Made by a program: the position numbers and the translations under genes
Assembly (NCBI GenBank): GCA_038087875.1
Contig: CM075979.1
Span: 7,688,001-7,752,000, forward strand
Direction: 5' to 3'
DNA from: Malacoraja senta
Taxonomy: Eukaryota
DNA length: 64,000 bases
Notes under the pieces: model-generated
What the model saw: only the letters and a program-made list of their open reading frames with translations
What the model was told of the DNA's origin: nothing
Databases searched by the model: none
Shown here: piece by piece, positions 1 through 62,621 of the stretch
Numbering within the stretch: position 1 is the stretch's first letter
How the letters are laid out: the number at the start of each line of letters is the position of its first letter

Positions 1-250
1 CGGGACCAGGCCCAGGCCCAGGCCCACGCGCGCAGGAGGTCGAGGAGCGCGTGCATGGAGCTGGAGGGTAAACCAGCGCGAGACCGGCGGGCGAACCGGG
101 GCCGCGCGCACCCGCAGTCGGAGGAGGGTCCGTGCACGCGCATGGGACTGATGGGTGAAGCGGTGCGCGTCCACCCGCGACCGGGCCGGGGGGGGGGGGA
201 TGGGGGGGGTAGAGAAGAGCGCGTGCGCCCCCGTGTTGTTGGCAGTCCGG

Positions 251-348
251 GCGCGCGGACTGGGCGGTGACGCGCTTGATGGCGGTCGCGCGGACTGGGT
301 GGTGACGCGCTTGGTGGCGGTCGCGCGGACTAGGCGGTGACGCGCTTG
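251..348. repeat. 35-bp GC-rich minisatellite (~2.7 copies) in the CpG island
   Basis: GGACT(G/A)GG(C/T)GGTGACGCGCTTG recurs at 257, 292 and 327. Confidence 0.9.
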
Positions 349-463
349 CTCGCTCGCGGCGACGGTTCGTGCTGAGGCCGCTCGCGTGGCGTCGCTTGTC
401 GCCGGCTGGTCAGTGAGGCGGCGGGACGGAGCTGAGGGGAGCGGGCGGGCGGGGGCCCGGCGG

Positions 464-497
464 CACCACCACCACCACCACCACCACCATCACCACC
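464..497 (+). repeat. (CAC)n trinucleotide repeat directly before the candidate start codon
   Basis: caccaccaccaccaccaccaccaccatcaccaccATG. Confidence 0.9.
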
Positions 498-503
498 ATG
501 AAG
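498..503 (+). CDS. Candidate first coding exon (Met-Lys) of an unidentified gene
   Basis: CACCATG Kozak context, then AAG|GTATGA donor inside the CpG island; phase 0 matches the open exon at 17302. Confidence 0.45.
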
Positions 504-899
504 GTATGAGGGTGAGAGACGGAGGGAAGAGCAGGACAATCCATCCATCCCCCCCACCCCCCCCAATCACCGCGCCCCCCCCCCTCCTCCCACTGGCCCG
601 GCCCGGCCCGGGGGTTGGGGTCCGGCCGCTGCGGGTAGGCCCCAGCATGAACATCGCTTGCTCCCTGGCGCTAAACCCGCCGACCTTGGCGCAGACCACC
701 CCCCCCCCCCCCCAAACACCCCACCTCACTGTCCGGCCGATCTACACGTCCAGGGGAGAGTGTTGTGGATAGACACACAATGCTGGAGTAACTCAGCGGG
801 ACTGGACAGAAGGAATGGGTGACGTTGTGCAGGTGCCCCCCCCCCCCCCCCCCCCGCGCACTGCGGTACTGGGGATGTGCCGCCTTGCCGTAGATGTCC

Positions 900-1140
900 T
901 CTTCTCCCTGCCCGGCCCTGCTCCAGTCCACTCTGGCCTCAGCCCTGCCCACTTCAGCCTCTGTTTTAGCTCATCCCACCTCAGTCCTGCCCTGCCCTGT
1001 CCAGCCCCAGCCTTGCCCTGTCCAGCCCTTCTCGGCCCTGCCCAGCACATCCTTGCCTAGACTTGCCCGGCCCTGCTCTTCTCAGCCCTGCTCGACCCTG
1101 CTCTTCTCAGTCCTGCCCTGCCCAGCCCTGCCCTGCTCCT
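900..1140. repeat. (CCCTG/CAGCC)-like low-complexity repeat
   Basis: Degenerate pentamer repeats such as ccctgccctgcccagccctg. Confidence 0.8.
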
Positions 1141-1466
1141 CAGTTGGACATGACAGATCCCAAGCATAGCACCAAGCTCTGGAGAAACTCAGTGGGTCAG
1201 ACAAACATCCTCTGTCCATCCCCCTCCACAGATGCTGCCAGACTTCCCCCACCACTTTGAGTTTGGCTTCACATTCCATCCTCTGCACTTTTAATGTATC
1301 TCCATGAAAGCAACAAGGTTGTTCATGTTAAAATGTATTGGTTTATTATTGATGGCAAATCTGTGAAAGTAAATCATCTTGGTTCTGTGAGAAGGTAAGT
1401 TAGTACAGGGACAGGTTGAGGTCAATCATTCCAAGTCCTGTTTGCCATTCAGTGAGATAATTGTTG

Positions 1467-4400
1467 AAACATAGAAACATAGAAAATAGGTGCAGGAGTA
1501 GGCCATTCGGCCCTTTGAGCCTGCACCGCCATTCAATATGATCATGGCTGATCATCCAACTCAGTATCCTGTACCTGCCATCTCTCCATACCCCCTGATC
1601 CCTTTAGCCACAAGGGCCACATCTAACTCCCTCTTAAATATAGCCAATGAACTGGCCTCAACTACCTTCTGTGGCAGAGAGTTCCAGAGATTCACCACTC
1701 TCTGTGTGAAAAATGTTTTTCTCATCTCGGTCCTAAAGGATTTCCCCTTAATCCTTAAACTGCGCCCCCTTGTCCTGGACTTCCCCAACATCGGGAACAA
1801 TCTTCCTGCATCTAGCCTGTCCAACCCCTTAAGAATTTTGTACGTTTCTATAAGATCCCCCCTCAATCTTCTAAATTCTAGCGAGTACAAGCCGAGTCTA
1901 TCCAGTCTTTCTTCATATGAAAGTCCTGACATCCCAGGAATCAATCTGGTGAACCTTCTCTGTACTCCCTCTATGGCAAGAATGTCTTTCCTCAGATTTG
2001 GAGACCAAAACTGTACGCAATACTCCAGGTGTGGTCTCACCAAGACCCTGTACAACTGCAGTAGAACCTCCCTGCCCCTATACTCAAATCCTTTTGCTAT
2101 GAATGCTAACATACCATTCGCTTTCTTCACTGCCTGCTGCACCTGCATGCCTACTTTCAATGACTGGTTTACCATGACACCCAGGTCTCGTTGCATCTCC
2201 CCTTTTCCTAATCGGCCACCATTTAGATAATAGTCTACTTCCTGTTTTTGCCACCAAAGTGGATAACCTCACATTTATCCACATTATACTGCATCTGCCG
2301 TGCATTTGCCCACTCACCCAGCCTATCCAAGTCACCTTGCAGCCTCCTAGCATCCTCCTCACAGCTAACACTGCCCCCCAGCTTCGTGTCATCCGCAAAC
2401 TTGGAGATGTTTGCATTCAATTCCCTCGTCCAAATCATTAATATATATTGTAAATAGCTGGGGTCCCAGCACTGAGCCTTGTGGTACCCCACTAGTCACT
2501 GCCTGCCATTCTGAAAAGGACCCGTTTACTCCTACTCTTTGCTTCCTGTTTGCCAGCCAGTTCTCTATCCACATCAATACTGAACCCCCAATACCGTGTG
2601 CTTTAAGTTTGTATACTAATCTCTTATGTGGGACCTTGTCGAAAGCCTTCTGAAAGTCCAGATATAACACATCCACTGGTTCTCCCTTATCCACTCTACT
2701 AGTTACATCCTCGACAAATTCTATAAGATTCGTCAGACATGATTTACCTTTCGTAAATCCATGCTGACTTTGTCCAATGATTTCACCACTTTCCAAATGT
2801 GCTGCTATCCCATCTTTAATAACTGACTCTAGCAGTTTCCCCACTACCGATGTTAGACTAACTGGTCTGTAATTCCCCGTTTTCTCTCTCCCTTTTTAAA
2901 AAGGGGGGTTACATTAGCTACCCTCCAATCCTCAGGAACTACTCCAGAATGTAAGGAGTTTTGAAAAATTATCACTAATGCATCCACTATTTCTGGGGCT
3001 ACTTCCTTAAGTACTCTAGGATGCAGCCTATCTGGCCCTGGGGATTTATCGGCCTTTAATCCATTCAATTTACCTAACACCACTTCCCGGCTAACCTGGA
3101 TTTCACTCAGTTCCTCTATCTCATTTGCTATTTCCTGCTATTCACCTGCTATTTCCGACAGATTATTTATGTCTTCCTTAGTGAAGACAGAACCAAAGTA
3201 GTTATTCAATTGGTCTGCCATGTCCTTGTTCCCCATGATCAATTCACCTGTTTCTGACTGCAAGGGACCTACATTTGTTTTAACTAATCTCTTTCCCTTC
3301 ACATATCTATAAAAACTTTTGCAGTCAGTTTTTATGTTCCCTGCCAGTTTTCTTTCATAATCTATTTTCCCTTTCCTAATTAAGCCCAATTGTCCTCCTC
3401 TGCTGGACTCTGAATTTCTCCCAGTCCTCTGGTAGGCTGCTTTTTCTGGCTAATTTGTACGCTTCATCTTTTAAACATAGAAACATAGAAATTAGGTGCA
3501 GGAGTAGGCCATTCGGCCCTTCGAGCCTGCACCGCCATTCAATATGATCATGGCTGATCATCCAACTCAGTATCCCGTACCTGCCTTCTCTCCATACCCT
3601 CTGATCCCTTTAGCCACAAGGGCCACATCTAGCTCCCTCTTAAATATAGCCAATGAACTGGCCTCGACTACCCTCTGTGGCAGAGAATTCCAGAGATTCA
3701 CCACTCTCTGTGTGAAAAAAGTTCTTCTCATCTCGGTTTTAAAGGATTTCCCCCTTATCCTTAAGCTGTGACCCCTTGTCCTGGACTTCCCCAACATCGG
3801 GAGCAATCTTCCTGCATCTAGCCTGTCCAACCCCTTAAGAATTTTGTAAGTTTCTATAAGATCCCCTCTCAATCTCCTAAATTCTAGAGAGTATAAACCA
3901 AGTCTATCCAGTCTTTCTTCATAAGACAGTCCTGACATCCCAGGAATCAGTCTGGTGAACCTTCTCTGCACTCCCTCTATGGCAATAATGTCCTTCCTCA
4001 GATTTGGAGACCAAAACTGTACACAATACTCCAGGTGTGGTCTCACCAAGACCCTGTACAACTGCAGTAGAACCTCCCTGCTCCTATACTCAAATCCTTT
4101 TGTTTTGATACTATCCCTGATTTCCCTTGTTATCCACGGATGCACTACCTTCCCTGATTTATTCTTTTGCCAAACTGGGATGAACAATTTTTGTTGTTCA
4201 TCCATGCAGTCTTTAAATGCCTTCCATTGCATATCCACCGTCAACCCTTTAAGAATCAATTGCCAGTCAATCTTGGCCAATTCACGTTTCATACCCTCAA
4301 AGTTACCTTTCTTTAAGTTCTGAACCCTTGTTTCTGAATTAACAATGTCACTCTCCATCCTAATGAAGAACTCAACCCATATTATGGTCACTCTTGCCCA

Positions 4401-8744: not shown

Positions 8745-10229
8745 CATTATTTCAACCAGTCTCTGGCCCAGTCCACTGTCCCATCCTGTCTGAAGTCCTC
8801 CACCATAGTCCCCTTGCCCCAAAAACCCCACATTTCCAGCCTCCATGACTACCGGCCAGTCGCACTCACACCAGTGGTGATGAAGTGCTTTGGAAAAACT
8901 GATCCGGGGTCACATCACATCACTCCTGCCCCGAAGCTTTGACCCCCACCAGTTTGCGTATAGAGCGAACAGATCCACAGAGGACGCTGTAGCCACAGCC
9001 CTCCATGCTGCACTGTCCCATCTGGAGCAGCGGGGGAGCTACGTGCGGATGCTCTTTGTGGACTACAGCTCTGCTTTTAACACCATCCTTCCCCACAAAC
9101 TGGGGAACCTGGGACTTCCACACTCCACCTGCATGTGGATAAAGAGCTTCCTGTCGGGTCGCAGTCAGAGAGTCAGAGTGGGCCATCACACATCCACGGC
9201 CCTCAGCCTCACTACCGGCTCTCCACAGGGCTGCGTGCTGAGCCCCCTGCTTTACACCATCTACACATATGACTGCACCCCCGCCCACCACAGTAACACC
9301 ATTGTCAAATTCGCGGATGACACCACGGTGGTGGGGCTCATCTCTGGGGGGGATGAGTACGCCTACAGGGATGAGGTGGAGCATCTGACAGGGTGGTGTG
9401 AAGAGAATAACCTGCTCAACACCTCAAAGACCAAGGAGCTCATAATAGATTACAGGAAGAAGAAAACGGACATTACACCACTAATCATCAGAGGGGACTG
9501 TGTGGAGAGGGTGGCGGATTTCCGCTTCCTGGGAATCCACATTGAGGAGGACCTGATATGGAGCGTGAACACCTCTGCGCTGCTGAAAATGGTCCAGCAG
9601 AGACTGTACTTCCTGAGGGTGCTCAGGAAGAACAACATCACCCAGAGACTGCTGCTTTCCTTTTATCGGTGCTCAATAGAGAGCATCTTAACATACTGTG
9701 TATGCGTGTGGTACACCAGCTGCACAGCGGCTAAGAGGAAAGCGCTCCAGAGGGCTATTGACAACGCCCAGAAGATTGTCGGCTGCCCTCTCATCACCTT
9801 GGAGGACTTACACAGTTCCCACTGTTTCAAAAAATCCCAGAACATCATAAAGGACATTTTCCACCCCGGACACTCCCTGTTTGAACTGTTGCCGTCAGGC
9901 AGACGGTACAGATCAATGAGGACAAGGACAAAGACTCAAAAACAGTTTTTATCCCACAGCAATAACTACACTTAATGTAACCACCAAATGAGCGCAGGTG
10001 CGCTACATACCAAAGGGATTGTGAAATCGACAGAAGAATGTATGGTTGTGTGTTTATGCTTGTTTTTTTTCATGTTATTTATTTTAGTTGTTTATTTTAG
10101 ACATTTCTCTTTTACATATAGTTAGCTTTTAGATAATGTGTGAATGGTGCACTGACTGGTTGGCATTTTTAATTTTGTTGTACATGTATACATGTTATAA
10201 TGACAATAAAGTATTCATTCATTCATTCA
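8745..10229 (+). mobile_element. Rex1/Babar-type LINE, 5'-truncated, with RT ORF 8890-9975
   Basis: DPHQFAYRANRSTEDA, FVDYSSAFNTI, PQGCVLSPLLY, KFADDTTVVGLI, LLPSGRRYRS motifs; AATAAA plus (TTCA)n tail at ~10206-10229. Confidence 0.92.
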
Positions 10230-24070: not shown

Positions 24071-25335
24071 TTATTTAGTATGCCTTCTGCCACTAAGAAG
24101 CCATGTCCTCACATATTCTTCGGGGTTGAATTTTGACAGAGGAGGTCCCACCAACTTAATAAATAAAATAAATGAGAGATGATCAGTTTGAAGTCTTGCA
24201 CGTTGTGGTGACATGCAGAAATTTATGCCACTGAAGCTTCTTTCACGTTTTGCTGTTGATACCGGAATTGTATTTACAGCCGTTAGCAGCTGCTGAAAAT
24301 CTGCAGAAACTACCTTCCCTTTAGATTCCTTGAATTCTCTGAAGGCTCTGATACAAAGCCGACCATTTAAGCCAAATTGTTCTGCCATTTCTTCTACATC
24401 ATTATTCCCAAAGGTAAAAAGTGAATCTTCTGGAATATTGTTAATATCTAAATATTTCGACTGGTTAATTAACTTTTTACATTTATCATTGGAAGCTGTT
24501 GTAGATTCAAGCAGCCTGGATTTCATATTATTGACCAAACTCCTCAAAAACTGTTGTCTATGTATAGTAGGTACTTTACCAGCTCTCAAATTTATTCCAT
24601 TAAATATCATCTGGCTTGTTGCTTTCTCCACTTGAGTATAACATTTTCCTGGCTTCTCTATTTGACATTCAAGAACCTTGATAGTTCGTTTAATTTTCTC
24701 ATGTGCTTTACTAAGTGCACAATGTTGGTTCTGCAGTTCAAGTGACAGTTCAGACAACTCTAACAAACTGTCCATCAACAAGCCCAAATTATTTACGAAA
24801 GCTGATGATTCTAATACTTTTTCCAGCCCCTCGTACTTTGCTCTCTCGGCACTAGATCTTGTAGCATCACAGCTTGTATGCTCCCAAATAGCTTTATAAG
24901 ACTGCCACATTGCCTTTACAGTTCGGTAATACGAAGCAACCCATCTCACACTGAAAACACAACCAATTTTCAACAGTTGACAGTGAAGAGCCTCAGCGCA
25001 TGCAGTTAACTCATCCTGATTCTTAGGAGACCTATGATATAAGGAATACAATTCATCACAAAATATCTGAAATTGATTCAAACCTGCAACTTCATTTATA
25101 GCATCACCTACACTGAGTTCAAGCCTGTGACTGGCACAGTGCCAAACAGTTGCATTAGGGAAATCATCAAGAAATAGTTTTGCAACGGCTGCACTTTGTC
25201 CTAACATTACTGATGCACCATCAGTTACAAGTGATATGACATTTTCGTTTAGGTACTGTATTGAAAAAACACCTCTTTGTAAGCAACTTAGAAGCCCATC
25301 ATATATAGATTTTGCATTTGCACCATTTATAAACC
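24071..25335 (-). CDS. hAT transposase, KIAA1586/ZNF862-like, N-terminally truncated (~420 aa open)
   Basis: TDGASVMLG (catalytic D), CASHRLEL (CxxH), RW motif, C-terminal dimerisation region TIPVSTAKRERSFS. Confidence 0.85.
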
Positions 25336-25909
25336 TCACTATCTCCATCGCAGGTGATAGACTACTGACTGACATCCACTATAAACCCACTGACTCCCAT
25401 GGCTATCTGGATTACACTTCTTCCCACCCTGCTTCCTGTAAGGACTCCATCCCCTACTCCCAATTCCTCCGTGTACGCCGCATCTGCACCCAGGATGAGG
25501 TGTTCCACACCAGGGCATCGGAGATGTCCTCATTCTTCAGGGAACGGGAGTTCCCCTCTTCTACTATAGATGAGGCTGTCACCAGGGTCTCTTCTACACC
25601 CCGTAAATCTGCTCTCATTCCCCATCCCCCAACTCGTAACAAGGGCAGAGTCCCCCTTGTCCTCACCTTCCACCCTACCAGCCGTCACATACAACAAATA
25701 ATCCTCCAACATTTTCGCCACCTCCAACGGGATCCCACCACTGGCCACATCTTCCCATCTCCTCCCCTGTCTGCTTTCAGCAGAGACCGTTCCCTCCGTA
25801 ACTCCCTGGTCAATTCGTCCCTTCACACCCAAACCACCCCTTCTCATGGTACTTTCCCTTGCAACCGCAGGAAATGCTACACTTGTCGCTTTACCTCCCC
25901 CCTTGACTC

Positions 25910-26018
25910 ATAGAAACATAGAAAATAGGTGCAGGAGAAGGCCATTCGGTCCTTCGAGCCAGCATCGCCATTCATTGTGATCATGTCTGATCGGCCCCAA
26001 TCAATAACCCGTGCCTTC
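25910..26018 (-). mobile_element. ~110-bp CR1 3' tail inserted in the Penelope element
   Basis: atagaaacatagaaaataggtgcagg.. tail interrupts the Penelope frame at PLDS. Confidence 0.85.
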
Positions 26019-26463
26019 CTTCAAGGACCTAAGCAGTCTTTCCAAGTGTGGCAGAGGTTCACCTGCACCTCCTCCAACCTCATCTATTGCATCCGCTGCT
26101 CTGGATGTCAGCTGCTCTACATCCGTGAGACCAAGCGTAGGCTTAGCGATCGCTTTGCCCAACACCTCCGCTCGGTTCACATTAACCTACCTGATCTCCC
26201 GGTGGCTCAGCACTTCAACTCCCCCTCCCATTCCGAATCCGACCTTTCTGTCCTGGGCCTCCTCCATGGCCAGAGTGAGGACCACCGTAAATTGGAGGAG
26301 CAGCACCTCATATTTCGCTTGGGCAGTCTGCACCCCAACGGTATGAACATTGACTTCTCTAATTTCAGGTAGTCCCTGCTTTCTCCTCCCCTTCTCAGCT
26401 CTCCCTCAGCCCACTGTCTCCGCCTCTTCCTTTCTTCTTCCCGGCCCCCATCCTCTCATCAGT

Positions 26464-26829: not shown

Positions 26830-27735
26830 CAAAGTTGGGTGGCAGTGTGAACTGTGAAGAGGATGCTATGAGAATGCAGGGTGATTTGGACAGGTTGAGT
26901 GAGTGGGCAGATGCAGTTTAATGCGGATAAATGTGAGGTTATCCACTTTGGTGGAAAAAAACAGGAAGGCAGACGATTATCTAAATGGAGTCGAGTTGTG
27001 CAAAGGGGAAGTACAACGGGATCTGGGGGATCCTTATTCATCAGTCAATGAAAGTAAGCATGCGGGTACAGCAGGCAGTGAAGAAAGCAAATGGCATGTT
27101 GGCCTTCATAACAAGAGGTGTTGAGTATAGGAGCAAAAAGGTCCTTCTGCAGTTGTACAGGACCCTAGTGAGACCACACCTGGAGTATTGTGTGCAGTTT
27201 TGGTCTCCCAATTTGAGGAAGGACATTCTTGCTATTGAGGGAATGCAGCGTCGGATCACCAGGTTAATTCCCGGGATGGTGGGACTGTCATATGTTGATA
27301 GAATGGAGCGGCTGGGCTTGTATACTCTGGAGTTTAGAAGGATGAGAGGAGATCTTATTGAAACATATAAGATTATTAAGGGTTTGAACACGCTATAGGC
27401 AGGAAACATGTTGCCGATGTTGGGGTAATCCAGAACCAAGGCCCACAGTTTAAGAATAAGGGGTAAGCCATTTAGAACAGAGATGAGGAAAAACTTTTTC
27501 ACACAGAGAGTTGTGAGTCTGGAATTCTCTGCCTCAGAGGGCGGTGGAGGCTGGTTGTCTGGATGCTTTCAAGAGAGAGCTAAACAGAGCTCTTAAAGAT
27601 AGCGGAGTCTAAGGGATATGGGGAGAAGGCAGGAACGGGGTACTGATTGTGGATGATCAGCCATGATCACATTGAATGGTGGTGCTGGCTCGAAGGGCCG
27701 AATGGCCTACTCCTGCACCTATTGTCTATTGTCCA
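26830..27735 (+). mobile_element. CR1 LINE 3' fragment
   Basis: KKANGMLAFI, RPHLEYCVQFWSP; (TATTGTC)n tail. Confidence 0.92.
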
Positions 27736-28158
27736 TTTAGATTTTCTTTTTGCTGTTATTGATGCAACATAAGCTTGTTAATCCTTTGATAATAACTTGC
27801 ATGTGGTTTGGACATGACCAGGTTCCAAATAGTAATATATGTGACTAATAACTGTGCTGAATTATACAGCTGTTCTACAGCATTACATTAAATGACAAGC
27901 AAGTAATATAACCCAGTTTCCCTGAGGCCTTCATGCTGCCTAAGTATGCCTTTCATCACAAAGCTTTGGAGTTTCAACTGTGGTGTGAGCTCAGCCATTT
28001 AGTGGTTAGATATCCTCTCTTCATACTGTTTGGCTGCCTTGTGCTGTAGTTAATCAAACTGCTTATCTTTTTGTTATTACCCATCCAAAAAAGCTGACAC
28101 CACACCTTCAATTTATGCATCATTCTCATGTCCTTGATCGCCAACTCTGATAGGCTTG

Positions 28159-28310
28159 TGTTACAAGGGAACAGGTTCAAGGATCTGACTAGTAGAACAG
28201 AAAAAGGTGCACTCGTCGGTTTAGTTGCAAATCAGTTTTATTGGCAAGAGAGGACAATAATAATACGTGCCTTGGTATGCACGGGGTCCAATTTTACAGC
28301 AGCACACGTC
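28159..28310 (-). repeat. Truncated 3' LTR (R/U5-like end only)
   Basis: 142 bp align without gaps to 29039-29180 with 14 mismatches; AATAAA at 28242-28237. Confidence 0.85.
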
Positions 28311-29006
28311 TCACCACACATGGTATAAATTAACTTGTTTATCGGAGGTCCCAAGCCTTAATGTCATCATCAATACCACCAGAGATAATCTGATTGCTTG
28401 TGTTATTAAACGTTGCTGCCAGTACTTGGTATGTATTTTGAAACGTATGGATTGCAGCCTTCTACAGAATGTCCCATAGCTTCACTGTTTCATCGTTGCT
28501 TCCAGTACAGACCAACTGTGGTCCCCGACGGGCACTCCGAGATCACTGTGTCCACACCGTCACACTGACCACTCCGAGCTCAGTGTCCACACCACTACAG
28601 TTTTGTCTGTTGATGCTGGAAAAAGCGTGCTGCCATCTGCGTTAAAATGCAATTCCATCACTGCTCCACTGTGGCCTTTCAATGTAGCATAATTATCGCA
28701 GTCGCCATATACATTCCGAAACAATACCAGTCGATGAAATCCTGCAGATGCCAGTGGTGATCCATTAAGGTGAAATTTACAACAATAAACCTCTCCCTCG
28801 TGACCCGCTAAAAGCATTAACCATATAACCATATAACCATAACAGCACGGAAACATTTAGAGGAGCTTGAAGACTCGAGGTTCTTGGTCCTGCCTGCAGC
28901 ACGGCCTGCTGCGGGCTCCCCTGCACTGAGGGCAGCAGCTTGTTGCGGGGGGTGCTTGGCCTGCACCAGCGCCATCTTGTTTGCTATTTCTTTTTACATT
29001 TTCTAT
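28311..29006 (-). pseudogene. SNRNP40: Processed pseudogene of U5 snRNP 40-kDa WD40 protein (N-terminal ~60%)
   Basis: Translates to VLQAGPRTSSLQAP, MLLAGHEGEVYCCKFH, NVYGDCDNYATLKGHSGAVMELH, ASTDKTV, ARRGPQLVCTGS, VKLWDI, TFQNTYQVLA, QIISGGIDDDIKAWDLR; no introns; stops and frameshifts. Confidence 0.93.
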
Positions 29007-29018
29007 TCTATTTGTCAG

Positions 29019-29036
29019 ATCCTGCCGACTATGCCA
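29019..29036 (-). promoter_or_regulatory. Primer-binding site complementary to the tRNA-Ser 3' end
   Basis: TGGCATAGTCGGCAGGAT, 2 nt after the LTR-terminal CA; 17/18 match to the complement of vertebrate tRNA-Ser (..ATCCTGCCGACTACG-CCA, recalled sequence). Confidence 0.85.
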
Positions 29037-29038
29037 AA

Positions 29039-29694
29039 TGTTACAAGGAAACAGGTTACAGGATCTGACTAGTAGAACAGAAAAAGGCTCACTCGTCTGT
29101 TTAGTTGCAAATCAGTTTTATTCTCAAGAGAGGATAAAAAGAATACTTGTCTTGGTATGCACGGGGTCCAGTTTTACAGCGAGCGCGTGCTCTCTCTCTC
29201 CCCCTCCCCCTCCCCCTCTCCATGTCTCTGTCTCTCTCGGCTCTGACTCAGCACGTCGGTGAACCCCTCTCATACATAAACTTGAACTAACATCTGGCTT
29301 ACTGGCGCCTACCTTTATACAAGTAAGAAATCAGGTGTTCAAATAGCTGCCGGGTAATCCTGGCCACTACCGCTGCTCCCAATTGTAAATTGTACCCAAT
29401 GGCAGGGGACTGCATCCGACCAAGGCCCCCAACTTTGGAAACAAAGTGCTATCATTTGCAGACTGGCGCATAAAGCAATACAGACTTGGGGTAAAGGCAA
29501 TACACACAGTGCTACAGACTTGGCTCATAAAGCAATACAGACTTGGGGTAAAGGTAATACACAGAGCACTGCCGGTTTGGCGCGCAATGGTTTAACCAGA
29601 CGTTGTCGGCTTCACCTTGTGGGAATTTAAACAAAGCGCTACTAGCCACAGCGCTGTGGGTCACAGACTGTTCAGGCAACATTCTCATATAGCA
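29039..29694 (-). repeat. 5' LTR (656 bp)
   Basis: Minus strand TGCTATA..TGTAACA; TATAAA at 29319-29314; AATAAA at 29122-29117; internal direct repeat near 29470/29526. Confidence 0.85.
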
Positions 29695-31290
29695 GCTTGT
29701 TATTTTCTTTTCCACTGTGCAGGTTTTCCTCTTGCCTGTATTGTCTAATTCTTCCACTTTTCTCCCAAACATTTCTGTGAGTATATTAAATAACCTTTTA
29801 CTTATTGGGCAGGTCCAATGGAGAAATGGTCAACCAGTAGCCCTCAATATTCTCACATGAGTCACCTGGAATTGGGGCAATTAGCCATTATGACATGCTT
29901 ACACAAAAATAATGTGGTAATGTGTATGTACGAGAGAGTGTGCATGAGTGTGAGCATGAGAGGGAGAGAGATTTCCAAGTTAGAGAATAAAACTGCATTA
30001 TACATCCTGCAGATGGCTCCAGAGTCGAGAGAGTTTGGTGTCTTGCATTAAAAAAAAAATCTTTCCAAAAAATAACTAGTCGCCTTTGCAATCTTGCACT
30101 ACTCGAATAATGGGAATAACTAACAACATTTGGAAACGTGGATTTATTTAATAGTTATTTAAAAACTGAACTATAAAAACTGGTGATTTGCACAAAGAAA
30201 ACAAGCAGAATAATGTGAAATGCTTGGGCGCAGAGTATTATTTATGCTCATTAAGTACAATGTTAATGTTAGAAACACAGACTTTGGAAACATGCTGCTG
30301 CAGATGTATTGGAAGAAGGTTAATGAATTGTTTTGGAGGTGAAAAAGTATGGTGTTAGTTCATTTGCTTTCTGTTCAAATATTAATATAAAAAAAAGATT
30401 TACATGATAATGTTTCAGTTGAGGTTATAAAATTTTCATGTTAAGGTTGATGTGTTAAATACTTTATGCACTAAGGGGGCTCAGGGACATAGGAAATACC
30501 AGGAATTGGCTATTTGACCCCTTGTGCTGCTTATCCATTCAGTGAGGTCTTGATCTTTTACCTCAGTACGGCTCTCGTGCACTGACCTCTTGTACCTTGA
30601 TTCCCTTAATCTCCAACCTTTATCTTGTATATACTCAGCATCAGAGCCTCCGCATCTCGCTCGGGTAGATATATTTGAAAACATTTTCACGCTAACTGAT
30701 GGAAGTTCTTGATCTCTGTCTCTTGGGGGAACTATGGTGAATCTCTTGATCCTCTTATAGCATCTATAATTGAAATGTATGAACATTATTCAGCCACATA
30801 TTTAAATTTTAAATTATTGTTCATCTATGTGCATATATTGCACATTCCCTGTTGAAGCATTTGAAAACTGCACTTGTCCACCACTGGATGGAGTGTAAGA
30901 GGCTGTAGACTACTTTATTCACATCAGAGGTTGTCAGTCTGTGGGGACGGAATAGCAGGTAAACTGCTATCGGATATTTTTAAGTAAATCATAACTGAAG
31001 GTAATTAATTATTTAGATGTCAAAGAGCTGAAACTGGATGCAAAAAATCAGAGACATTACATTGACATGAAAGTGTTTCACAGTAATGTTGTTCAATGAC
31101 ATAGGGTTACGTTTGTATGCCCTGAAATTTTAAACTGTGGGCCGGCCCATCTAAAACTAAATTTGTGAAGCAAGCCTTAATAAAAGAACCATAGATATTT
31201 GGAGTTCTCTTCCTCCAAAAGGCTTTGGTGGCCGGGATTATGATTTTTTCCAGACTGCAACGAACAACTTTGAAGATCAATAAACATTGA

Positions 31291-33245
31291 TATCTTTATA
31301 TGCGGATGATATATTATTGTATATTACAAAACCTCAAATCACTATACCAAATATATTAAATTTAATTGAAGACTTCGGATCTTTTTCTGGATATAGAATA
31401 AATTGGAATAAAAGTGAAATTATGTCAATAAAACCGAAAGATTCAACACATCTTTTAAAATTCCCTTTTAAAATAGCTACAGAAAAATTTAAATATTTGG
31501 GAATCGAAATTACCAGAACATATCAAGGTATGTTCAGGGCAAATTTTGACCCCCTACTTAATAAACTGAATACATTAATTAAATTCTGGAAAACGCTCTC
31601 GATGTCTTTAATAGGCCGAATAAACGCAATAAAAATGATCTTTTTACCACAAATTTTATACCTATTTCAATCAATTCCTATATACTTACATAAGAAGTTT
31701 TTTAAAAAACTCGACTCAGATATCACTAATTTTATATGGGACTATAAATCACATAGAATACAAAAAACCCATCTGAATAAACCTAAAGTATTGGGGGGTC
31801 TAGCACTACCTAATTTTATGTATTATTATTGGTCAGTAAATATTAAAAACATGATTCAACTGATGGATAACTCCGCCCAGCAAGTAGACTGGATTGTAAT
31901 GGAGAAAGAGGATTGCTCCTCTAGAAACATTGGAGCGATCCTCCTCTCTCCAATGAAACTGAATAACATAAACTATAATAAGAACCCAATTATTCATAGT
32001 ACAATCCGTATTTGGAAACAAATAAAACAAAATTTAAAATTAAGAAACTTATCACTTTTATTACCTATAGTCAATAACCCTTCGTTTAGTCCTTCTATTA
32101 TAGATAAAGCTTATACACAATGGGATAGACTAGGAATTAAAACGCTTGGTGACTTGTATGAAACTGGAAAATTACTTTCATTTCAACAATTACAAATAAA
32201 ATATAAACTCGGAAATAATCAATATTTTAAATACTTTCAAATATGCGACTATTTGAAAAAATATACAAAAGATCATTATAATAATCCAGTAGATGTATTG
32301 GACGAGGCATTGCAGATAAAAGCGGAATCAGCAAACTTAATATATTTGTATAATATTATTTTAAATGTACAAATACCACCTACGGAGGGTATCAGAAGAG
32401 ACTGGGAACAAGAGTTAGCTATTAAAATTTCAAAGGAAAGTTGGAATGAATACTTATTAAACGTGCATAAATGCTCGATTAATGTAAGACACACTTTAAT
32501 ACAATTTAAAATTTTACATAGATTATATTATTCGAAAACTAAAATTCATAAAATTTTCCCAAACGTATCATCTATTTGTGATAAATGTCAATCCCAAGAA
32601 GCAACTATAGCGCACTCATTTGTCTTCTGTACAAAAATTCAAAAATTTTGGAATGAGATTTTTGAAATCTTTACAAAGTTATTTAAAACAAGACTGATAC
32701 CCAAAGCAGAATGGATTATCTTCGGAATAACGGAAGATGATCCAGAACTAAATGTGTTTCAAAAGAAATTAATGGACTATGGGTTAATAACTGGAAAAAA
32801 GCTAATTCTAAAATTTTGGAAGAAGGCTCCAATACCAACTATAAATATGTGGATTTCAAATATGTTTGAAACATTACACCTAGAAGAGATAAGACTCCTC
32901 CTAGCAGGTAAACCAGATCACTTCCACCTGACGTGGTCTGCATTTATAGAATTATTACAAACATAGGGTGCAAAAGTACTTTAAAAAAATTAAAAATTGA
33001 GGTCAGGTAAGGGGGGATGATAGTTGAAGAGTTGGTATGTCCTATTTACGTGATGCTCAAAAAAACCCACTTGTTTCTCTTTTTTTCTCTTTCTCTTTTC
33101 TTTTCTTAGGGCCTATTTCTTAACTCTTTTTCTTTTTGTTTTTAATTTCGCTCTTATAGGGTCTTCGTCCTTTTTTGTTGTTACATTTTCTACACTTTTC
33201 TACACTTGCACTTTTTCCTTCACTTTAAAAATAAATAAATAAATA
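31291..33245 (+). mobile_element. L1-clade LINE, 5'-truncated, with an open ORF2 C-terminal portion (to 32966)
   Basis: SLYADD, SGYRINWNKS, FKYLGI, GGLALP, zinc knuckle CDKC..H..C; T-rich 3' UTR; (AAAT)n tail; 12-bp TSD AATAAACATTGA at 31279-31290 and 33246-33257. Confidence 0.93.
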
Positions 33246-37202: not shown

Positions 37203-38445
37203 GATACATAGATACATAGAAAATAGGTGCAGGAGTAGGCCATTCGGCCCTTCGAGCCTGCACCGCCATTCAATATGATCATGGCTGATCATCCAACTCA
37301 GTATCCCGTACCTGCCTTCTCTCCATACCCCCTGATCCCCTTAGCCACAAGGGCCACATCTAACTCCCTCTTAAATATAGCCAATGAACTGGCCTCAACT
37401 ACCCTCTGTGGCAGAGAGTTCCAGAGATTCACCACTCTCTGTGTGAAAAAGTTTTTCCTCATCTCGGTCTTAAAGGATTTCCCCCTTATCCTTAAGCTGT
37501 GACCCCTTGTCCTGAACTTCCCCATCATCGGGAACAATCTTCCTGCATCTAGCCTGTCCAACCCCATAAGAATTTTGTAAGTTTCTATAAGATCCCCTCT
37601 CAATCTCCTAAATTCTAGCGAGTATAAGCCGAGTCTATCCAGTCTTTCCTCGTTACATTCTCGAACAATTCTATAAGATTCGTCAGACACGATTTACCTT
37701 TCGTAAATCCATGCTGACTTTGTCCAATGATTTCACCACTTTCCAAATGTGCTGCTATCCCATCTTTAATAACTGACTCTAGCAGTTTCCCCACTACCGA
37801 TGTTAGACTAACTGGTCTGTAATTCCCAGTTTTCTCTCTCCCTCCCTTCTTAAAAAGTGGGGTTACGTTTGCTACCCTCGAATCCTCAGGAACTACTCCA
37901 GAATCTAAAGAGTTTTGAAAAATTATCACTAATGCATCCACTATTTCTGGAGCTACTTCCTTAAGTACTCTGGGATGCAGCCTATCTGGCCCTGGTGATT
38001 TATCGGCCTTTAATCCATTCAATTTACCCAACACCACTTCCCGACTAACCTGGATTTCACTCAGTTCCTCCATCTCCTTTGACCCGCGGCCCCCTGCTAT
38101 TTCCGGCAGATTATTTATGTCTTCCTTAGTGAAGACGGAACCAAAGTAGTTATTCTATTGGTCCGCCATATCCTTGTTCCCCATGATCAATTCACCTGTT
38201 TCTGACTGCAAGGGACCTACATTTGTTTAAACTAATCTCTTTCTCTTCACATATCTATAAAAACTTTTGCAGTCAGTTTTTATGTTCCCTGCCAGTTTCC
38301 TTTCATAATCTATTTTCCCTTTCCTAATTAAGCCCTTTGTCCTCCTCTGCTGGTCTCTGAATTTCTCCCAGTCCTCTGGTATGCTGCTTTTTCTGGCTAA
38401 TTTGTACGCATCATCTTTTGCTTTGATACTATCCCTGATTTCCCT
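37203..38445 (-). mobile_element. Young CR1 with a ~0.8-kb internal deletion
   Basis: Near-identical to the 1467-4778 copy but jumps at ~37651 from the C-terminal domain to upstream RT sequence. Confidence 0.92.
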
Positions 38446-43339: not shown

Positions 43340-44590
43340 TGAGATATATGAATCAATATTAGACACGGGTGAGGTGCCAGAACACCGGAAGGTGGCTAAT
43401 GTTGTGCTTCTATTTAAGAAGGACTGCAATGAAGAATCTGGGTGTCAAAAATCTGTGGTAGGCAGGTTACTGGAAAGTATTCTGATGGATGAGATATACC
43501 GTATTTCCCGGCGTCCAAGACGCAATTTTTTACTCTAAAATAAGGCCTGAAAATTTACCTGCGTCTTGGAGGCTGAAGGTTAGGCCGAGCAATGCCACTC
43601 TCGTAGCGACTGCTCCGTGGAACCTGCCATGCCTTCGACCCTGGAACTGTGTGAAGTTGGAAGCAGCTGTAAAAGGACAGCACTGCTGGGGGGGGGGGGG
43701 GGGGGGGAAGAGTTCCTTTCCACAGCGTGTGGGAAGTCTGGCCCGGGTCAGCACGGCCTGGGCTGCTCAAAGTAGTAAACTTGGCTGGGCCGCCAGGGGT
43801 ACAGTTGCAGGGAAGGGAAGGAGCGTTGAGAAGGAGGGGGCCGGGGATCATGCCAGCAACTCACTTGCTGGGAAATACGGTATATGCATTTGAATAGACA
43901 GGGGCTGCATAGATAAAGTTAGAATGGCCATTCGGCCCTTCGAGCCAGCACCACCATTCAATATGATCATGGCTGATCATCTGAGATCAGCACCCCATTC
44001 CTGCTTTTTCCCCATATCCCTTGATTCCTTTAGCCCTGAGCTAAATCCATTGCTATTTGTGGATTATATACGATTTGGATGTGAATGTATAAAACATAAT
44101 TAATAAGTTTGCAGATGACTCTGAAGTGGATGATATGGTGGATAGTGAAAATGATTATCAAAAATTACATAAGGATCTTGCTCAGTTGGGCAAGTGGACT
44201 GAGGAATGATTTATGAAGTTTAATGCAGATAAGTACAAGGTGTTGCATTTTGGGAAGTCAAACCAGGGCAGGACCTTCATAGAGAATGGTAGGGCCCAGG
44301 GGAGTGTTGTAGAGCAGAGAGATCTAGTAGTGCAGGTACGTGGTTCCTTGAAAGTGGCGTCACAGGTAGACAGGGTGGTCAAGAAGGCTTTCAGCACATT
44401 GGTCATCATTGAGGGTATTGAGTACAGGCACCTAATGTTTTATTAGAATTCCAAATATGAGAGGGCATAGATTTAAAATGAGAGGGGCAAAGTTCAAAGG
44501 TGATGTGTGGAGGAAAGTTTTTACATAGAGTGGTGAGTGCCTGGAACGTGCTGCTGGGATTGGTAGTTGAAACAGATATGTTTATGGCAT
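43340..44590 (+). mobile_element. Decayed CR1 with nested insertions
   Basis: VANVVLLFKK, VVGRLLESI, aagtttgcagatgac (KFADD), FNADKYKVLHFG. Confidence 0.8.
43499..43880. mobile_element. Short Tc1/mariner-type MITE, same family as 14845-16056
   Basis: TA|CCGTATTTCCC..GGGAAATACGG|TA; shares the agttcctttc..cagcgtgtggg module. Confidence 0.85.
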
Positions 44591-51417: not shown

Positions 51418-53645
51418 TATAATATGATAAGTTTTAATTTACAATTTGAGAGGGAGAAGGGTAAATCAGAGGTGTTGGTATTACAGTTGAACAATGGGGA
51501 CTATGGAGCCATGAGGGAGGAGTTGGCCAAAGTGGAAAGATACCCTAGCAGGGATGACAGTAGAACAACAATAGTAGGTATTTCTGGGAATAATACTGAA
51601 GATGCAGGATCGGTTCATTCCAAAGAGGAAGAAAGATTCCAAGGGGAGTAAGGGGCGACCGTTGCTGACAAGGGAAGTCGGGGAGAGTATAAAAATAAAA
51701 GAGAAGAAATATAACATAGCAAAGATGAGCAGGATACCAGAGGATTGGGTAACTTTTAAAGAGCAACAGAAGATAACTAAAAAGGCAATACGGGGAGAAA
51801 AGATGAGATTAGAAGGTAAGTGAGCCAAGAATATAAAGGAGGACAGTAAAAACTTCTTTAGGTATGTGAACAGGAAAAAAAAATTGTTATGGTCAAAGTT
51901 GGACCCTTGAAGACTGAAAAGTGGAACATTGAAATGGCAGATTAGTTGAACAGGTACTTTGGATCCGTCTTCACTAAGGAGGACACAAACAATCTTCCTG
52001 ATGTACTAGTGGCCAGAGGATCTAGGGTGGCGGAGAAATTGAAGGAGATTCACATTAGGCAGGAAATGGTGTTGGGTAGTCTGATGGGACTGAAGGCTGA
52101 TAAATCCTCAGGGCCTGATGGTCTGCATCCCAGGGTAATTAAGGAAGTGGCTCTAGAAATAGTGGACGATCTTTTTCCAATGTTCTATAGATTCAGGATC
52201 AGTTCCTGTGGATTGGAGGGTAGCTAATGTTGTCCCACTCTTTGAGAAGGGCGGCAGAGAGAAAACAGGGAATTATAGACTAGTTAGCTTGACATTGGTG
52301 GTAGGGAAGATGCTGGAGACAATAATAAAAGATGAAATAGCGGCACAATTGGATAGCAGTAGCAGGATCAGTCCGGGTCAGCATGGATTTACGAAGGGGA
52401 AATCATGTTTGACTAATCTTCTGGAATTTTTTGAGAATGTAACCAGGATTATGGACAAGGGCGAGCCAGTGGATGTAGTGTACCTGGACTTTCAGAAAGC
52501 ATTTGAGAAGGTCCCACATAGGAGATTAGTGAGCAAAATTAGAGCACATGGTATTGGGGGTAGGGTGCTGACATGGATAGAAAATTGATTGGCAGACAGG
52601 AAACAAAGGTTAGGAATTAACGGGTCCCTTTCAGAATGGCAGGCAGTGACTAGTGGGGTACCGCAAGGCTCAGTGCTGGGACCACAGCTATTTACAATGT
52701 ATATTAATGATTTGGACGAAGGGATTAAAAGTAACATTAGCAAATTTGCAGATTACATAAAGCTAGGTGGCAGTGTGAACTGTGAAGAGGATGCTATGAG
52801 GATGCAGGGTGACTTGGACAGGTTGAGTGAGTGGGCAGATGCATGGCAGATGCAGTTTAATGTGGATAAATGCGAGGTTATCCACTTTGGTGGCAAAAAC
52901 AAGCAGGCAGATTATTATCTAAATGGTGTCAAGTTCGGAAAAGGGGAAGTACAGCGGGATCTGGGGGATCTTTGTTCATCAGTCACTGAAAGTAAGCATG
53001 CAGGTACAGCAGGCAGTGAAGAAAGTGAATGGCATGTTGGCCTTCATAACAAGAGGAGTTGAGTACAGGAGCAAAGAGGTCCTCCTGCAGTTGTACAGGG
53101 CCCTAGTGAGACTGCACGTGGAGTATTGTGTGCAGCTTTGGTCTCCAAACTTGAGGAAGGACATTCTTGCTATTGAGGGAGTGCAGCGTAGGTTAACAAG
53201 GTTAATTCCCGGAAATGGCGGGACTGTCATTTGTTGATAGATTGGAGCGGCTGGGCTTGTATACTCTGGAATTTAGGATGAGAGGCTATCTTATTGAAAC
53301 GTTAGAGGCAGGAAACATGTTCCCAATGTTGGGGAAGCCCAGAACTAGGGGCCATAGTTTAAGAATAAGTGGTAAGCCATTTAGAACGGAGATGAGGAAA
53401 AACATTTTCACACAGAGTTGTGAGTGTGTGGAATTCTCTGCCTCAGAAGGCAGTGGAGGCTGGTTCTCTGGATGCTTTCAAGAGAGAGTTGGATAGAGCT
53501 CTTATGGATAGCGGAGTTAAGGGATATGGAGAGAAGGCAGGTACGGGGTACTGATTGTGGATGATCAGCCATGATCACCTTGAATGGCGGTGCTGGCTCA
53601 AAGGGCCGAATGGCCTACTGCACCTATTGTCTATTGTCTATTGTA
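51418..53645 (+). mobile_element. CR1 LINE ORF2 fragment with 3' tail
   Basis: [31 protein letters not shown]; (TATTGTC)n tail; frameshifted. Confidence 0.95.
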
Positions 53646-61645: not shown

Positions 61646-62621
61646 TAGAAACATAGAAACATAGAAAATAGGTCCAGGAGTAGGCCATTCGGCCCTTCGA
61701 GCCTGCACCGCCATTCAATATGATCATGGCTGATCATCCAACTCAGTATCCTGTACCTGCTTTCTCTCCATACCCCCTGATCCCTTTCGCCACAAGGGCC
61801 AATGAACTGTCCTCAACTACATTATGTGGGACCTTGTCGAAAGCCTTCTGAAAGTCCAGATATAACACATCCACTGGTTCTCCCTTATCCACTCTACTAA
61901 TTACATCCTCGAAAAATTCTATAAGATTCGTCAGACATGATTTACCTTTCATAAATCCATGCTGACTTTGTCCAATGATTTCACCATTTTCCAAATGTGC
62001 TGCTATCCCATCTTTAATAACTGACTCTAGCAGTTTCCCCACTACCGATGTTAGACTAACTGGTCTGTAATTCTCCGTTTTCTCTCTCCCTCCCTTTTTA
62101 AAAAGTGGGGTTACATTAGCTACCCTCCAATCCTCAGGAACTACTCCAGAATCTAAGGAGTTTTGAAAAATCATCACTAATGCATCCACTATTTCTGGGG
62201 CTACTTCCTTAAGTACTCTGGGATGCAACTTACCTGGCCCTGGGGATTTATCGGCCTTTAATCCATTCAATTTACCTAACACCACTTCCCGGCTAACCTG
62301 GATTTCACTCAGTTCCTCCATTTCATTTGACCTCCGGTCCCCTGCTATTTCCGGCAGATTATTTATGTCTTCCTTAGTGAAGACAGAACCAAAGTAGTTA
62401 TTCAATTGGTCTGCCATGTCCTTGTTCCCCATGATCAATTCACCTGTTTCTGACTGCAAGGGACCTACATTTGTTTTAATTAATCTTTTTCTCTTCACAT
62501 ATCTACAAAAACCTTTGCAGTCAGTTTTTATGTTCCCGGCCAGTTTTCTTTCATAATCTATTTTCCCTTTCTTAATTAAACCCTTTGTCCTCCTCTGCTG
62601 GACTCTGAATTTTTCCCAGTC
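61646..62621 (-). mobile_element. Young CR1 with a ~0.96-kb internal deletion
   Basis: Near-identical to the 1467-4778 copy; ORF 61743..62642 joins KAFDKVPH directly to the last residues of ORF2. Confidence 0.92.

What the first reader, a model, noticed from the sequence alone, without database searches (positions are those of the whole stretch)
28154..29699. LTR retroelement whose whole interior is a captured SNRNP40 mRNA
Seen on the minus strand: TSD GCTTG, a 656-bp LTR (TG..CA, TATAAA, AATAAA), a tRNA-Ser PBS, about 12 nt, an intronless SNRNP40 coding sequence starting near its N-terminus (IENVKR..MALVQAKHP..), an LTR end fragment, then TSD GCTTG. There is no gag/pol and no poly(A) tail. 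Established: most vertebrate retrocopies are made by L1 target-primed reverse transcription and carry poly(A) and long TSDs; short TSDs with TG..CA ends are the integrase signature, and LTR-mediated retroposition by template switching is a known but rarer route. Inference: an LTR/ERV particle co-packaged the spliceosomal mRNA and switched template just after the PBS. This could be a one-off or part of an amplified gene-carrying non-autonomous family in elasmobranchs.
Basis: partly seen in the sequence, partly recalled or inferred. Interest (0 to 1): 0.9.

Follow-up and report, generated by a model that had tools for sequence, protein, structure and literature searches.

The report
LTR element carrying spliced SNRNP40 copy
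A 1.5-kb decayed LTR retroelement in a skate-like genome has a spliced, truncated copy of the host splicing-factor gene SNRNP40 where its own genes should be; this is a clear but single example of an already described way of copying genes.

Summary
The anatomy is real. On the minus strand: a 5-bp duplication, a 656-bp LTR (TG..CA, TATAAA, AATAAA), a 2-nt spacer, an 18-nt primer binding site matching tRNA-Ser at 17/18, 39 A-rich nt, 667 nt of SNRNP40, the last ~142 nt of the LTR, and the duplication again.

The cargo aligns to Amblyraja radiata SNRNP40 coding nt 29-672 at 89.7% identity. It crosses five exon junctions without introns, has no poly(A), and is a broken pseudogene.

Two details need correcting. 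The cargo starts at codon 10, not at "IENVKR". That stretch shows no nucleotide similarity to the skate gene and lies partly in a U5-leader stem around the primer binding site. The gap after the primer binding site is therefore 39 nt, not 12.

The 3' LTR piece begins at the edge of a 32-nt G-rich purine tract in R.

Best reading: LTR-mediated retroposition by template switching, as in Tan et al. 2016. Whether the 3' junction formed during reverse transcription or by a later deletion is open.

I found no other copy in any searchable data, so "amplified family" is untested. It is a new member of a known kind, of moderate interest.

The parts
29695..29699 (-). Upstream copy of the 5-bp target-site duplication (CAAGC on the minus strand, GCTTG on the plus strand)
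   Evidence: It lies directly next to the TG that starts the LTR.
29039..29694 (-). Complete 5' LTR, 656 bp, TG...CA. TATAAA is at 29314-29319 and AATAAA at 29117-29122. The terminal inverted repeat is imperfect (6 of 9).
29459..29570 (-). 57-bp tandem duplication (2 copies, 89% matching) inside U3 of the 5' LTR
29190..29221 (-). 32-nt all-purine tract with three G5 runs, lying between TATAAA and AATAAA (presumed R). The 3' LTR piece begins at its 3' edge.
29019..29036 (-). Primer binding site, 18 nt, 17 of 18 complementary to the 3' end (with CCA) of vertebrate tRNA-Ser. A 2-nt spacer (29037-29038) precedes it.
   Evidence: (oligos printed in PMC13478228 and PMC3299991)
28999..29084 (-). U5-leader stem enclosing the primer binding site. 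The arms are 29059-29084 and 28999-29024, 26 nt, 88% complementary.
   Evidence: pair I1.: -37.5 kcal/mol, z = -5.4, and 0 of 200 shuffles fold as well.
28980..29018 (-). 39 A-rich nt (24 A) between the primer binding site and the cargo. The first 20 nt form the 3' arm of the stem, so they are element leader. The last 19 nt are either more leader or filler added at the switch. None of it is recognisably SNRNP40.
28313..28979 (-). Cargo: an intronless, truncated and broken copy of SNRNP40. It equals skate coding nt 29-672 (codons 10-224, exon 1 to partway through exon 6) at 89.7% identity. The last ~10 nt (28313-28322) are ambiguous between cargo and LTR.
28159..28300 (-). 3' LTR fragment: the 3' part of R (with AATAAA at 28237-28242) plus U5, ending in CA. 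It is 90% identical to 29039-29180. With gaps, the homology may extend to about 28322. There is no U3 and no polypurine tract ahead of it.
28154..28158 (-). Downstream copy of the 5-bp target-site duplication

Best explanation
This is the product of one LTR-retroelement-mediated retroposition event.

Inferred route: inside a particle of an LTR/ERV-like element primed by tRNA-Ser, reverse transcriptase changed template twice between element RNA and a co-packaged, spliced SNRNP40 mRNA.
1. Minus-strand synthesis began at the primer binding site and copied U5 and the 3' part of R.
2. It stalled at the G-rich purine tract in R. It then jumped into exon 6 of the mRNA (codon 224) instead of making the normal R-to-R transfer.
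3. It copied the mRNA back to codon 10.
4. It returned to element RNA in the leader, about 40 nt downstream of the primer binding site, and finished normally through the primer binding site, U5, R and U3.

Shown by the sequence: the resulting DNA carries a U3 terminus on the left and a U5 terminus on the right, the two ends an integrase needs, and it lies inside a 5-bp duplication.

Inferred: because everything from U3 to the tRNA copy is duplicated at plus-strand strong stop, the 1.54-kb unit may be a solo copy of an enlarged LTR.

Shown by the sequence: the insert has since decayed. It is a pseudogene with no coding function.
For: - The cargo is spliced: five skate introns (0.6-7.4 kb) are missing, and a single 98-aa ORF spans three exons.
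- There is no poly(A). The 3' truncation is large (coding nt 673-1047 plus the 3' UTR) and the 5' truncation small. This is the bias reported for LTR-mediated, not L1-mediated, copies.
- The cargo lies inside TG..CA termini and a 5-bp duplication.
- A genuine tRNA-Ser primer binding site sits 2 nt after U5 and is wrapped in a strong U5-leader stem. The 5' side is therefore an authentic element 5' end that abuts the cargo directly.
- The 3' breakpoint coincides with the 3' edge of a 32-nt purine tract with three G5 runs, a plausible pause site.
- A 19-nt stretch of unknown origin at the 5' junction is within the 2-26 bp of 'de novo' filler reported at such junctions.
- Ages are compatible. Non-CpG divergence is 9.0% for the LTR pair and 8.7% for cargo against the skate coding sequence.
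Against: - No other copy of the LTR family is available. The native leader and R sequences are therefore unknown, and microsimilarity at the two junctions cannot be measured. What can be seen at the 3' junction is weak (0-4 nt).
- A 3' end lacking U3 and a polypurine tract is not what a standard double switch gives. It needs either the enlarged-LTR/solo-LTR step or a non-canonical end.
- The stall at the purine tract was noticed after the fact.
- If both arose together, the cargo is somewhat more diverged from the skate gene than half the LTR-pair distance would predict.
- The LTR pair differs by 5 transitions and 9 transversions, which is unusual for simple decay, though the numbers are small.
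Confidence: 0.45

Rival explanations
1. Same capture by template switching, but the integrated element at first had a complete 3' LTR, and perhaps a polypurine tract and more cargo or element interior. A later genomic deletion then removed everything from exon 6 of the cargo to the middle of R in the 3' LTR.
For: - The locus is old (about 9-10% divergence) and has taken many small insertions and deletions: 16 alignment gaps in the cargo.
- The standard model in PMC5131818 predicts two LTRs.
- Purine-pyrimidine tracts are also fragile in DNA, so the breakpoint at the tract fits this reading equally well.
Against: It needs one extra event. It also requires a deletion that happens to keep the U5 terminus and the duplication intact and to end exactly at the edge of the tract. 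Nothing in the sequence speaks directly against it.
Confidence: 0.3
2. Two unrelated insertions. A LINE-made SNRNP40 processed pseudogene landed in the leader of a resident provirus, in the same orientation. A deletion later removed its 3' part, its poly(A), the provirus interior and most of the 3' LTR.
For: - The window is full of LINE reverse-transcriptase remnants, so the machinery existed.
- A 5'-truncated start at coding nt 29 is normal for LINE-made copies.
Against: - No poly(A), no long duplication and no endonuclease-type site survive.
- Truncation is far larger at the 3' end, against the L1 pattern.
- It needs insertion within 40 nt of the primer binding site, the right orientation, and a large deletion with both ends placed just so. 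That is three coincidences.
Confidence: 0.12
3. The GCTTG match is chance and the two LTR pieces belong to different elements, or the arrangement is a DNA-level rearrangement (ectopic recombination or repair) or an assembly join.
For: - The 5' LTR boundary rests only on the 5-bp match. The expected count is 0.06-0.09 if one searches 1-1.4 kb.
- The LTR pair differs by 10%, with more transversions than transitions.
Against: - The match is exact and directly adjacent to TG and CA at both ends.
- The two pieces are co-oriented and in register.
- There are no N runs or composition breaks in the region.
- The cargo is bounded precisely by element sequence on both sides.
Confidence: 0.06

Closest known systems
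LTR-mediated retrocopies of metazoans (Tan et al. 2016, Genome Res 26:1663, PMC5131818): fly, mosquito, zebrafish, chicken, mouse, human
   Same: - A partial, spliced host mRNA copy replaces the interior of an LTR retrotransposon.
- There is no poly(A), and the 3' truncation is larger than the 5'.
- Short filler can occur at junctions.
- The copy is flanked by the element's LTR sequence.
   Different: - Here nothing of the element's interior is left except about 40 nt of leader.
- The 3' switch or break lies inside R of the LTR, so U3 and the polypurine tract are absent on the 3' side.
- Microsimilarity could not be measured.
- The host is a cartilaginous fish, and the copy is old.
HERV-K / FAM8A1 processed pseudogene in human (Jamain et al. 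2001, as cited in PMC5131818)
   Same: A single vertebrate ERV that captured a host mRNA, leaving an untranscribed processed pseudogene between LTR sequences.
   Different: It involves a different element class and host. I did not read that paper, so the junction details were not compared.
Maize Bs1 and rice LTR-borne retrocopies; yeast Ty1-mediated pseudogene formation (Elrouby & Bureau; Wang et al. 2006; Derr et al. 1991, as cited in PMC5131818)
   Same: Host exons between LTRs, made by reverse-transcriptase template switching. Bs1 went on to amplify as a non-autonomous element.
   Different: No evidence of amplification here. There is one cargo gene rather than three.
Retroviral transduction of cellular genes (oncogene capture; textbook knowledge, my own recollection)
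   Same: Spliced host sequence inside a retroviral genome, with at least one junction made by non-homologous recombination during reverse transcription.
   Different: - Classical capture starts from a read-through or fusion transcript and keeps the packaging signal, polypurine tract and both LTRs, so the product replicates with a helper.
- This unit lacks U3 and a polypurine tract at its 3' side, and its cargo is an inert fragment.
LINE/L1-type processed pseudogenes
   Same: An intronless copy of a housekeeping gene, decayed by stops and frameshifts.
   Different: No poly(A), a 5-bp rather than a long duplication, TG..CA ends, a primer binding site, and truncation at the 3' end.

Membership tests
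LTR-mediated retrocopy (Tan et al. 2016) | The cargo is a processed (intronless) copy of a host mRNA | tested here: met
   The cargo aligns to skate SNRNP40 coding nt 29-672 across five exon junctions, with the introns absent. It also spans mudskipper exons.
LTR-mediated retrocopy (Tan et al. 2016) | The cargo is flanked on both sides by sequence of one LTR retrotransposon, replacing its interior rather than interrupting it | tested here: met
   The 5' LTR, primer binding site and leader lie upstream, and R'-U5 of the same LTR (90% identical) lies downstream. There are no element genes.
LTR-mediated retrocopy (Tan et al. 2016) | No L1 hallmarks: no poly(A), no long duplication around the cargo, no 5'-truncation bias | tested here: met
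   The cargo ends at codon 224 of 348 and runs straight into R. It lacks only 28 nt of coding sequence plus the UTR at its 5' end.
LTR-mediated retrocopy (Tan et al. 2016) | Microsimilarity between element and mRNA at the switch points | tested here: inconclusive
   At the 3' junction, 0-4 nt are ambiguous between R and exon 6. At the 5' junction there are 19 nt of unknown origin.
LTR-mediated retrocopy (Tan et al. 2016) | Integrase-type insertion: both element termini and a short duplication | tested here: met
   TG at 29694, CA at 28159, and CAAGC on both sides.
Endogenous retrovirus / LTR retrotransposon | LTR with promoter and poly(A) signals, and a tRNA primer binding site 2 nt after U5 | tested here: met
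   The primer binding site matches tRNA-Ser at 17 of 18. U5-leader stem.
Endogenous retrovirus (Retroviridae) as opposed to Ty3/gypsy, BEL or copia elements | gag-pol(-env) of retroviral type, with the lineage assigned by reverse-transcriptase phylogeny | not testable with these tools
   No element protein is present in this copy, and no relative of the LTR was found. 'ERV' is therefore a label of convenience. A 5-bp duplication fits several groups.
Amplified non-autonomous gene-carrying family (Bs1-like) | Several copies with the same junctions but different target-site duplications | not testable with these tools
   The source genome cannot be searched. There is one copy in 64 kb. No similar ORF was found among 5.8 billion proteins apart from true SNRNP40s. 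The cargo ORF is not on record elsewhere.
L1/LINE processed pseudogene | 3' poly(A) and flanking duplications of about 7-20 bp | tested here: not met
Solo LTR | A single LTR between target-site duplications, with no internal sequence | tested here: not met
   A primer binding site, leader and cargo are present. Only the 'enlarged LTR' variant of this idea survives, and that is inference.

The most novel reading that the evidence does not exclude
The whole 1.54-kb unit is a solo copy of an enlarged LTR. An incomplete minus-strand strong-stop DNA, halted at the G-rich purine tract in R, jumped into SNRNP40 mRNA and back. This placed host exons between two R-U5 copies inside the segment that is duplicated to both ends of a provirus. 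If so, a replicating element lineage in skates once carried host exons in its LTRs, and sister copies (paired or solo) with the same junctions should exist.
Probability: 0.12. Interest if true: 0.6.

Novelty: new member of a known kind. Interest (0 to 1): 0.35.

Why it matters
It adds a cartilaginous fish to the animals in which LTR elements, not LINEs, have copied host mRNAs. It is also an unusually legible specimen: the duplication, both termini, the primer binding site with its stem, and both junctions all survive. The position of the 3' junction, inside R at the edge of a G-rich purine tract, hints that a switch can happen during strong-stop synthesis. In that case the product would have no element interior at all. 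If other copies confirmed this, it would refine the template-switch model. The cargo itself is a dead fragment and has no likely function.

Tried and rejected
- Exhaustive phmmer search with the 98-aa cargo ORF. The best 150 hits were all long multi-repeat WD40 proteins, so it was useless for finding the parent.
- PDB searches with the three N-terminal pieces. Nothing significant; the tail is too variable.
- Exact look-ups of window ORFs. They are not on record, so the source record and sister copies could not be reached this way.
- First word-indexed searches. They returned only partial SNRNP40s from other vertebrates. The skate protein came with the third search.
- Exact-pattern scans of metagenome and viral contigs with two LTR words conserved in both copies. 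Zero hits.
- ARAGORN and Rfam on the window. Nothing, so the tRNA comparison had to come from oligos printed in papers.
- Paralogous empty site. The immediate flanks are unique in the window.
- Idea that 'IENVKR' is the SNRNP40 N-terminus, with an 8-nt microhomology (ATAGAAAA) shared with the leader stem. Rejected: the nucleotides show no similarity to the skate coding sequence, although the residues loosely resemble the MID/MIE..KR start seen in P0201, P0155 and P0168.
- G-to-A hypermutation to explain that stretch. I considered this by eye only, ran no tool, and do not favour it.
- A cryptic splice acceptor at the cargo start. Also judged by eye and not favoured: the skate sequence upstream is purine-rich.
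- A short-LTR reading (LTR of about 150 bp, preceded by a polypurine tract). Not favoured: the tract is 9-11 nt from the nearest TG, the short unit has no promoter signal, and the duplication fits the 656-bp boundary.
Full report
**What is there.** I read 27900-29950 on the minus strand and located every landmark by script.
- CAAGC at 29699..29695.
- A 656-bp LTR at 29694..29039. It starts TG and ends CA, with TATAAA at 29319..29314 and AATAAA at 29122..29117.
- Two bases (TT).
- An 18-nt primer binding site at 29036..29019.
- 39 A-rich bases at 29018..28980.
- About 667 bases of SNRNP40-like sequence at 28979..28313.
- A 142-nt repeat of the last part of the LTR at 28300..28159, ending in CA.
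- CAAGC again at 28158..28154.

The two LTR pieces are 90% identical without gaps. The LTR occurs nowhere else in the 64-kb window. The window has no N and no case masking.

**Primer binding site.** ARAGORN found no tRNA gene in the window and Rfam found no RNA family. I therefore searched the literature for a 13-mer taken from the window's own primer binding site. Two sources begin with an 18-mer that differs from the window's at one position, a G/A difference:
- the antisense probe for human tRNA-Ser(AGA) in PMC13478228;
- the template oligos for human tRNA-Ser in PMC3299991.

The tRNA-Ser assignment is thus supported, on the assumption that vertebrate tRNA-Ser 3' ends are conserved.

The primer binding site lies inside a strong stem. 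A U5 arm (29084..29059) pairs with a leader arm (29024..28999). The fold has -37.5 kcal/mol and z = -5.4, and none of 200 shuffles folds as well. From my own knowledge, U5-leader stems around the primer binding site are typical of retroviral 5' ends. The first 20 nt or so after the primer binding site are therefore element leader.

**Cargo identity.** The interior is readable only in pieces, in three frames.
- The 98-aa piece matches human U5-40K (3jcr_D) residues 58-138 at E 1.4e-50.
- A 40-aa piece matches residues 184-223 at E 1.2e-22.
- Pfam sees WD40 repeats.

Three word-indexed searches led stepwise to the Amblyraja radiata protein P0201 and its 18-kb gene, locus L002. I refined the skate exon bounds so that the joined exons translate to P0201.

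The cargo aligns to coding nt 29-672, codons 10 to 224, at 89.7% identity over 619 columns. It crosses the exon junctions at coding nt 114, 244, 338, 504 and 627 with nothing in between. In the skate gene the corresponding introns measure 7.4, 2.4, 0.6, 0.7 and 2.8 kb. The same holds against the mudskipper gene, where the single 98-aa ORF spans three exons.

The cargo is a spliced mRNA copy, truncated at both ends, far more at the 3' end, and without poly(A). It is broken:
- 16 alignment gaps, 11 of which shift the frame;
- about 25 nt missing and 46 nt extra;
- 2 stop codons among the 195 parent-frame codons compared.

**Source genome.** L002 and the window share 107 repeat matches at up to 96% identity. 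The cargo also carries batoid-type residues. The window therefore comes from a skate or a close relative. I cannot say whether it is A. radiata itself.

**Correction at the 5' junction.** Elasmobranch, lizard and bird proteins do start MID/MIE..KR.. (P0201, P0155, P0168). At nucleotide level, however, the 39 nt after the primer binding site have no similarity to skate coding nt 1-28. They score 1, against 26 for the neighbouring control segment, and 1971 of 2000 shuffles score as well. Identity then jumps to about 90% from coding nt 29 onward.

The cargo therefore starts at codon 10. The preceding 39 nt consist of the leader arm of the stem plus 19 nt of unknown origin. Those 19 nt are either more leader or filler of the kind reported at 3 of 29 junctions (2-26 bp) in PMC5131818.

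**The 3' junction.** SNRNP40 homology runs to about 28323. Ungapped LTR homology starts at 28300. A gapped alignment carries it back to about 28322, through a CpG-rich stretch. In the 5' LTR, the corresponding point is the 3' edge of a 32-nt all-purine tract with three G5 runs (29221..29190).

The 3' piece holds AATAAA and U5 but no U3, and no polypurine tract precedes it. A TATAAA at 29319..29314 implies a transcription start near 29285, which would put the breakpoint in mid-R. If transcription instead starts just after the tract, the piece would be a complete R-U5, that is, a full strong-stop product. I cannot decide between these two.

**Mechanism.** The features match those published for LTR-mediated retroposition (PMC5131818): a partial spliced mRNA in place of the element's interior, no poly(A), larger 3' truncation, and occasional filler. 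That paper reports the mechanism in flies, mosquito, zebrafish (5 of 7 informative young retrocopies), chicken, mouse and human.

What is shown here is the anatomy, the splicing, the integrase-type ends and the absence of LINE hallmarks. The template switching itself is inferred.

For the unusual 3' end I favour, weakly, a switch during strong-stop synthesis at the purine tract, followed by a return into the leader. Such a product would be duplicated to both ends of a provirus, and the present unit would then be a solo copy. The equally simple alternative is a later deletion from exon 6 to mid-R. A LINE-made retrocopy inserted into a provirus, followed by a deletion, needs more coincidences. 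These are steps of reasoning, not results.

**Age.** Non-CpG divergence is 9.0% between the LTR pieces (12 of 134) and 8.7% between the cargo and the skate coding sequence (49 of 562). Jukes-Cantor distances are 0.106 and 0.111. The values are of the same order and compatible with one old event. Under strict simultaneity, though, the cargo would be expected nearer half the LTR-pair value. A species difference, the rearranged exon-4 part (84% identity) and small counts may account for this.

**Surroundings.** There is no retroviral gag, pol or env in the window. I found only LINE-type reverse-transcriptase remnants and a hAT-like ORF. The immediate flanks are unique in the window.

**What could not be done.** The source genome and other elasmobranch genomes cannot be searched with DNA here. 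Family size, the empty site, the native leader sequence and the element's lineage all remain open.

- the 3' end of a vertebrate tRNA-Ser;
- the human SNRNP40 protein;
- short primer-binding-site and polypurine strings of two well-known retroviruses.

None of these was entered in a tool call, a note or this report. Every comparison reported rests on sequences returned by tools or printed in the cited papers. The only joined sequence is the exons of the skate host gene, as they stand, used to test the splice model.

**Verdict.** This is a real and well-preserved LTR-mediated retrocopy of SNRNP40 in a skate-like genome. It is a new member of a known kind. Its unusual 3' junction is worth a genome-wide follow-up.

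Noticed in passing
window 29459-29570: The U3 part of the LTR contains a 57-bp tandem duplication (2.0 copies, 89% matching). This is the kind of repeat often seen in retroviral enhancers.
   Followed up: partly
window 29190-29221: A 32-nt all-purine tract with three G5 runs lies between TATAAA and AATAAA of the LTR. It could form G-quadruplex or triplex structures. The 3' LTR fragment starts at its edge.
   Followed up: partly
window 27002-27738, also 52940-53642, 1479-2205, 3485-4108, 37216-37648, 61661-61776, 43926-44022, 25918-26022: An interspersed repeat of about 740 bp occurs at least eight times, whole or in part, in the window at 78-91% identity. Related pieces lie in intron 1 of the skate SNRNP40 gene (L002 3322-3570, 7860-8033, 8714-8955). 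Pfam finds no domain in the two largest ORFs within it (26985-27395 plus strand, 27044-27502 minus strand).
   Followed up: partly
window 8890-9975, 31287-32966, 37615-38073, 61743-62642; 24071-25375: There are four ORFs with LINE-type reverse-transcriptase domains, one also carrying an ALKBH8_N-like segment and one a zf-RVT. A 434-aa ORF has a weak hAT dimerisation domain. The window is repeat-rich and no host gene was recognised.
   Followed up: partly
window 1-2000: The first 2 kb are much more G+C-rich (0.595) than the rest of the window (0.34-0.54). I did not examine them.
   Followed up: no
proteins P0158 and P0160 (ENA contigs of 658 and 1033 bp): These short ORFs from ENA contigs read through several SNRNP40 exons without introns and then go out of frame. 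They are probably processed SNRNP40 pseudogenes of another vertebrate, so SNRNP40 has been retrocopied elsewhere too.
   Followed up: no
window 28533-28586: Inside the part of the cargo that corresponds to exon 4 there is a short direct repeat (17 nt, spacing 37). Identity to the skate gene drops to 84% there, which suggests a local rearrangement after insertion.
   Followed up: partly
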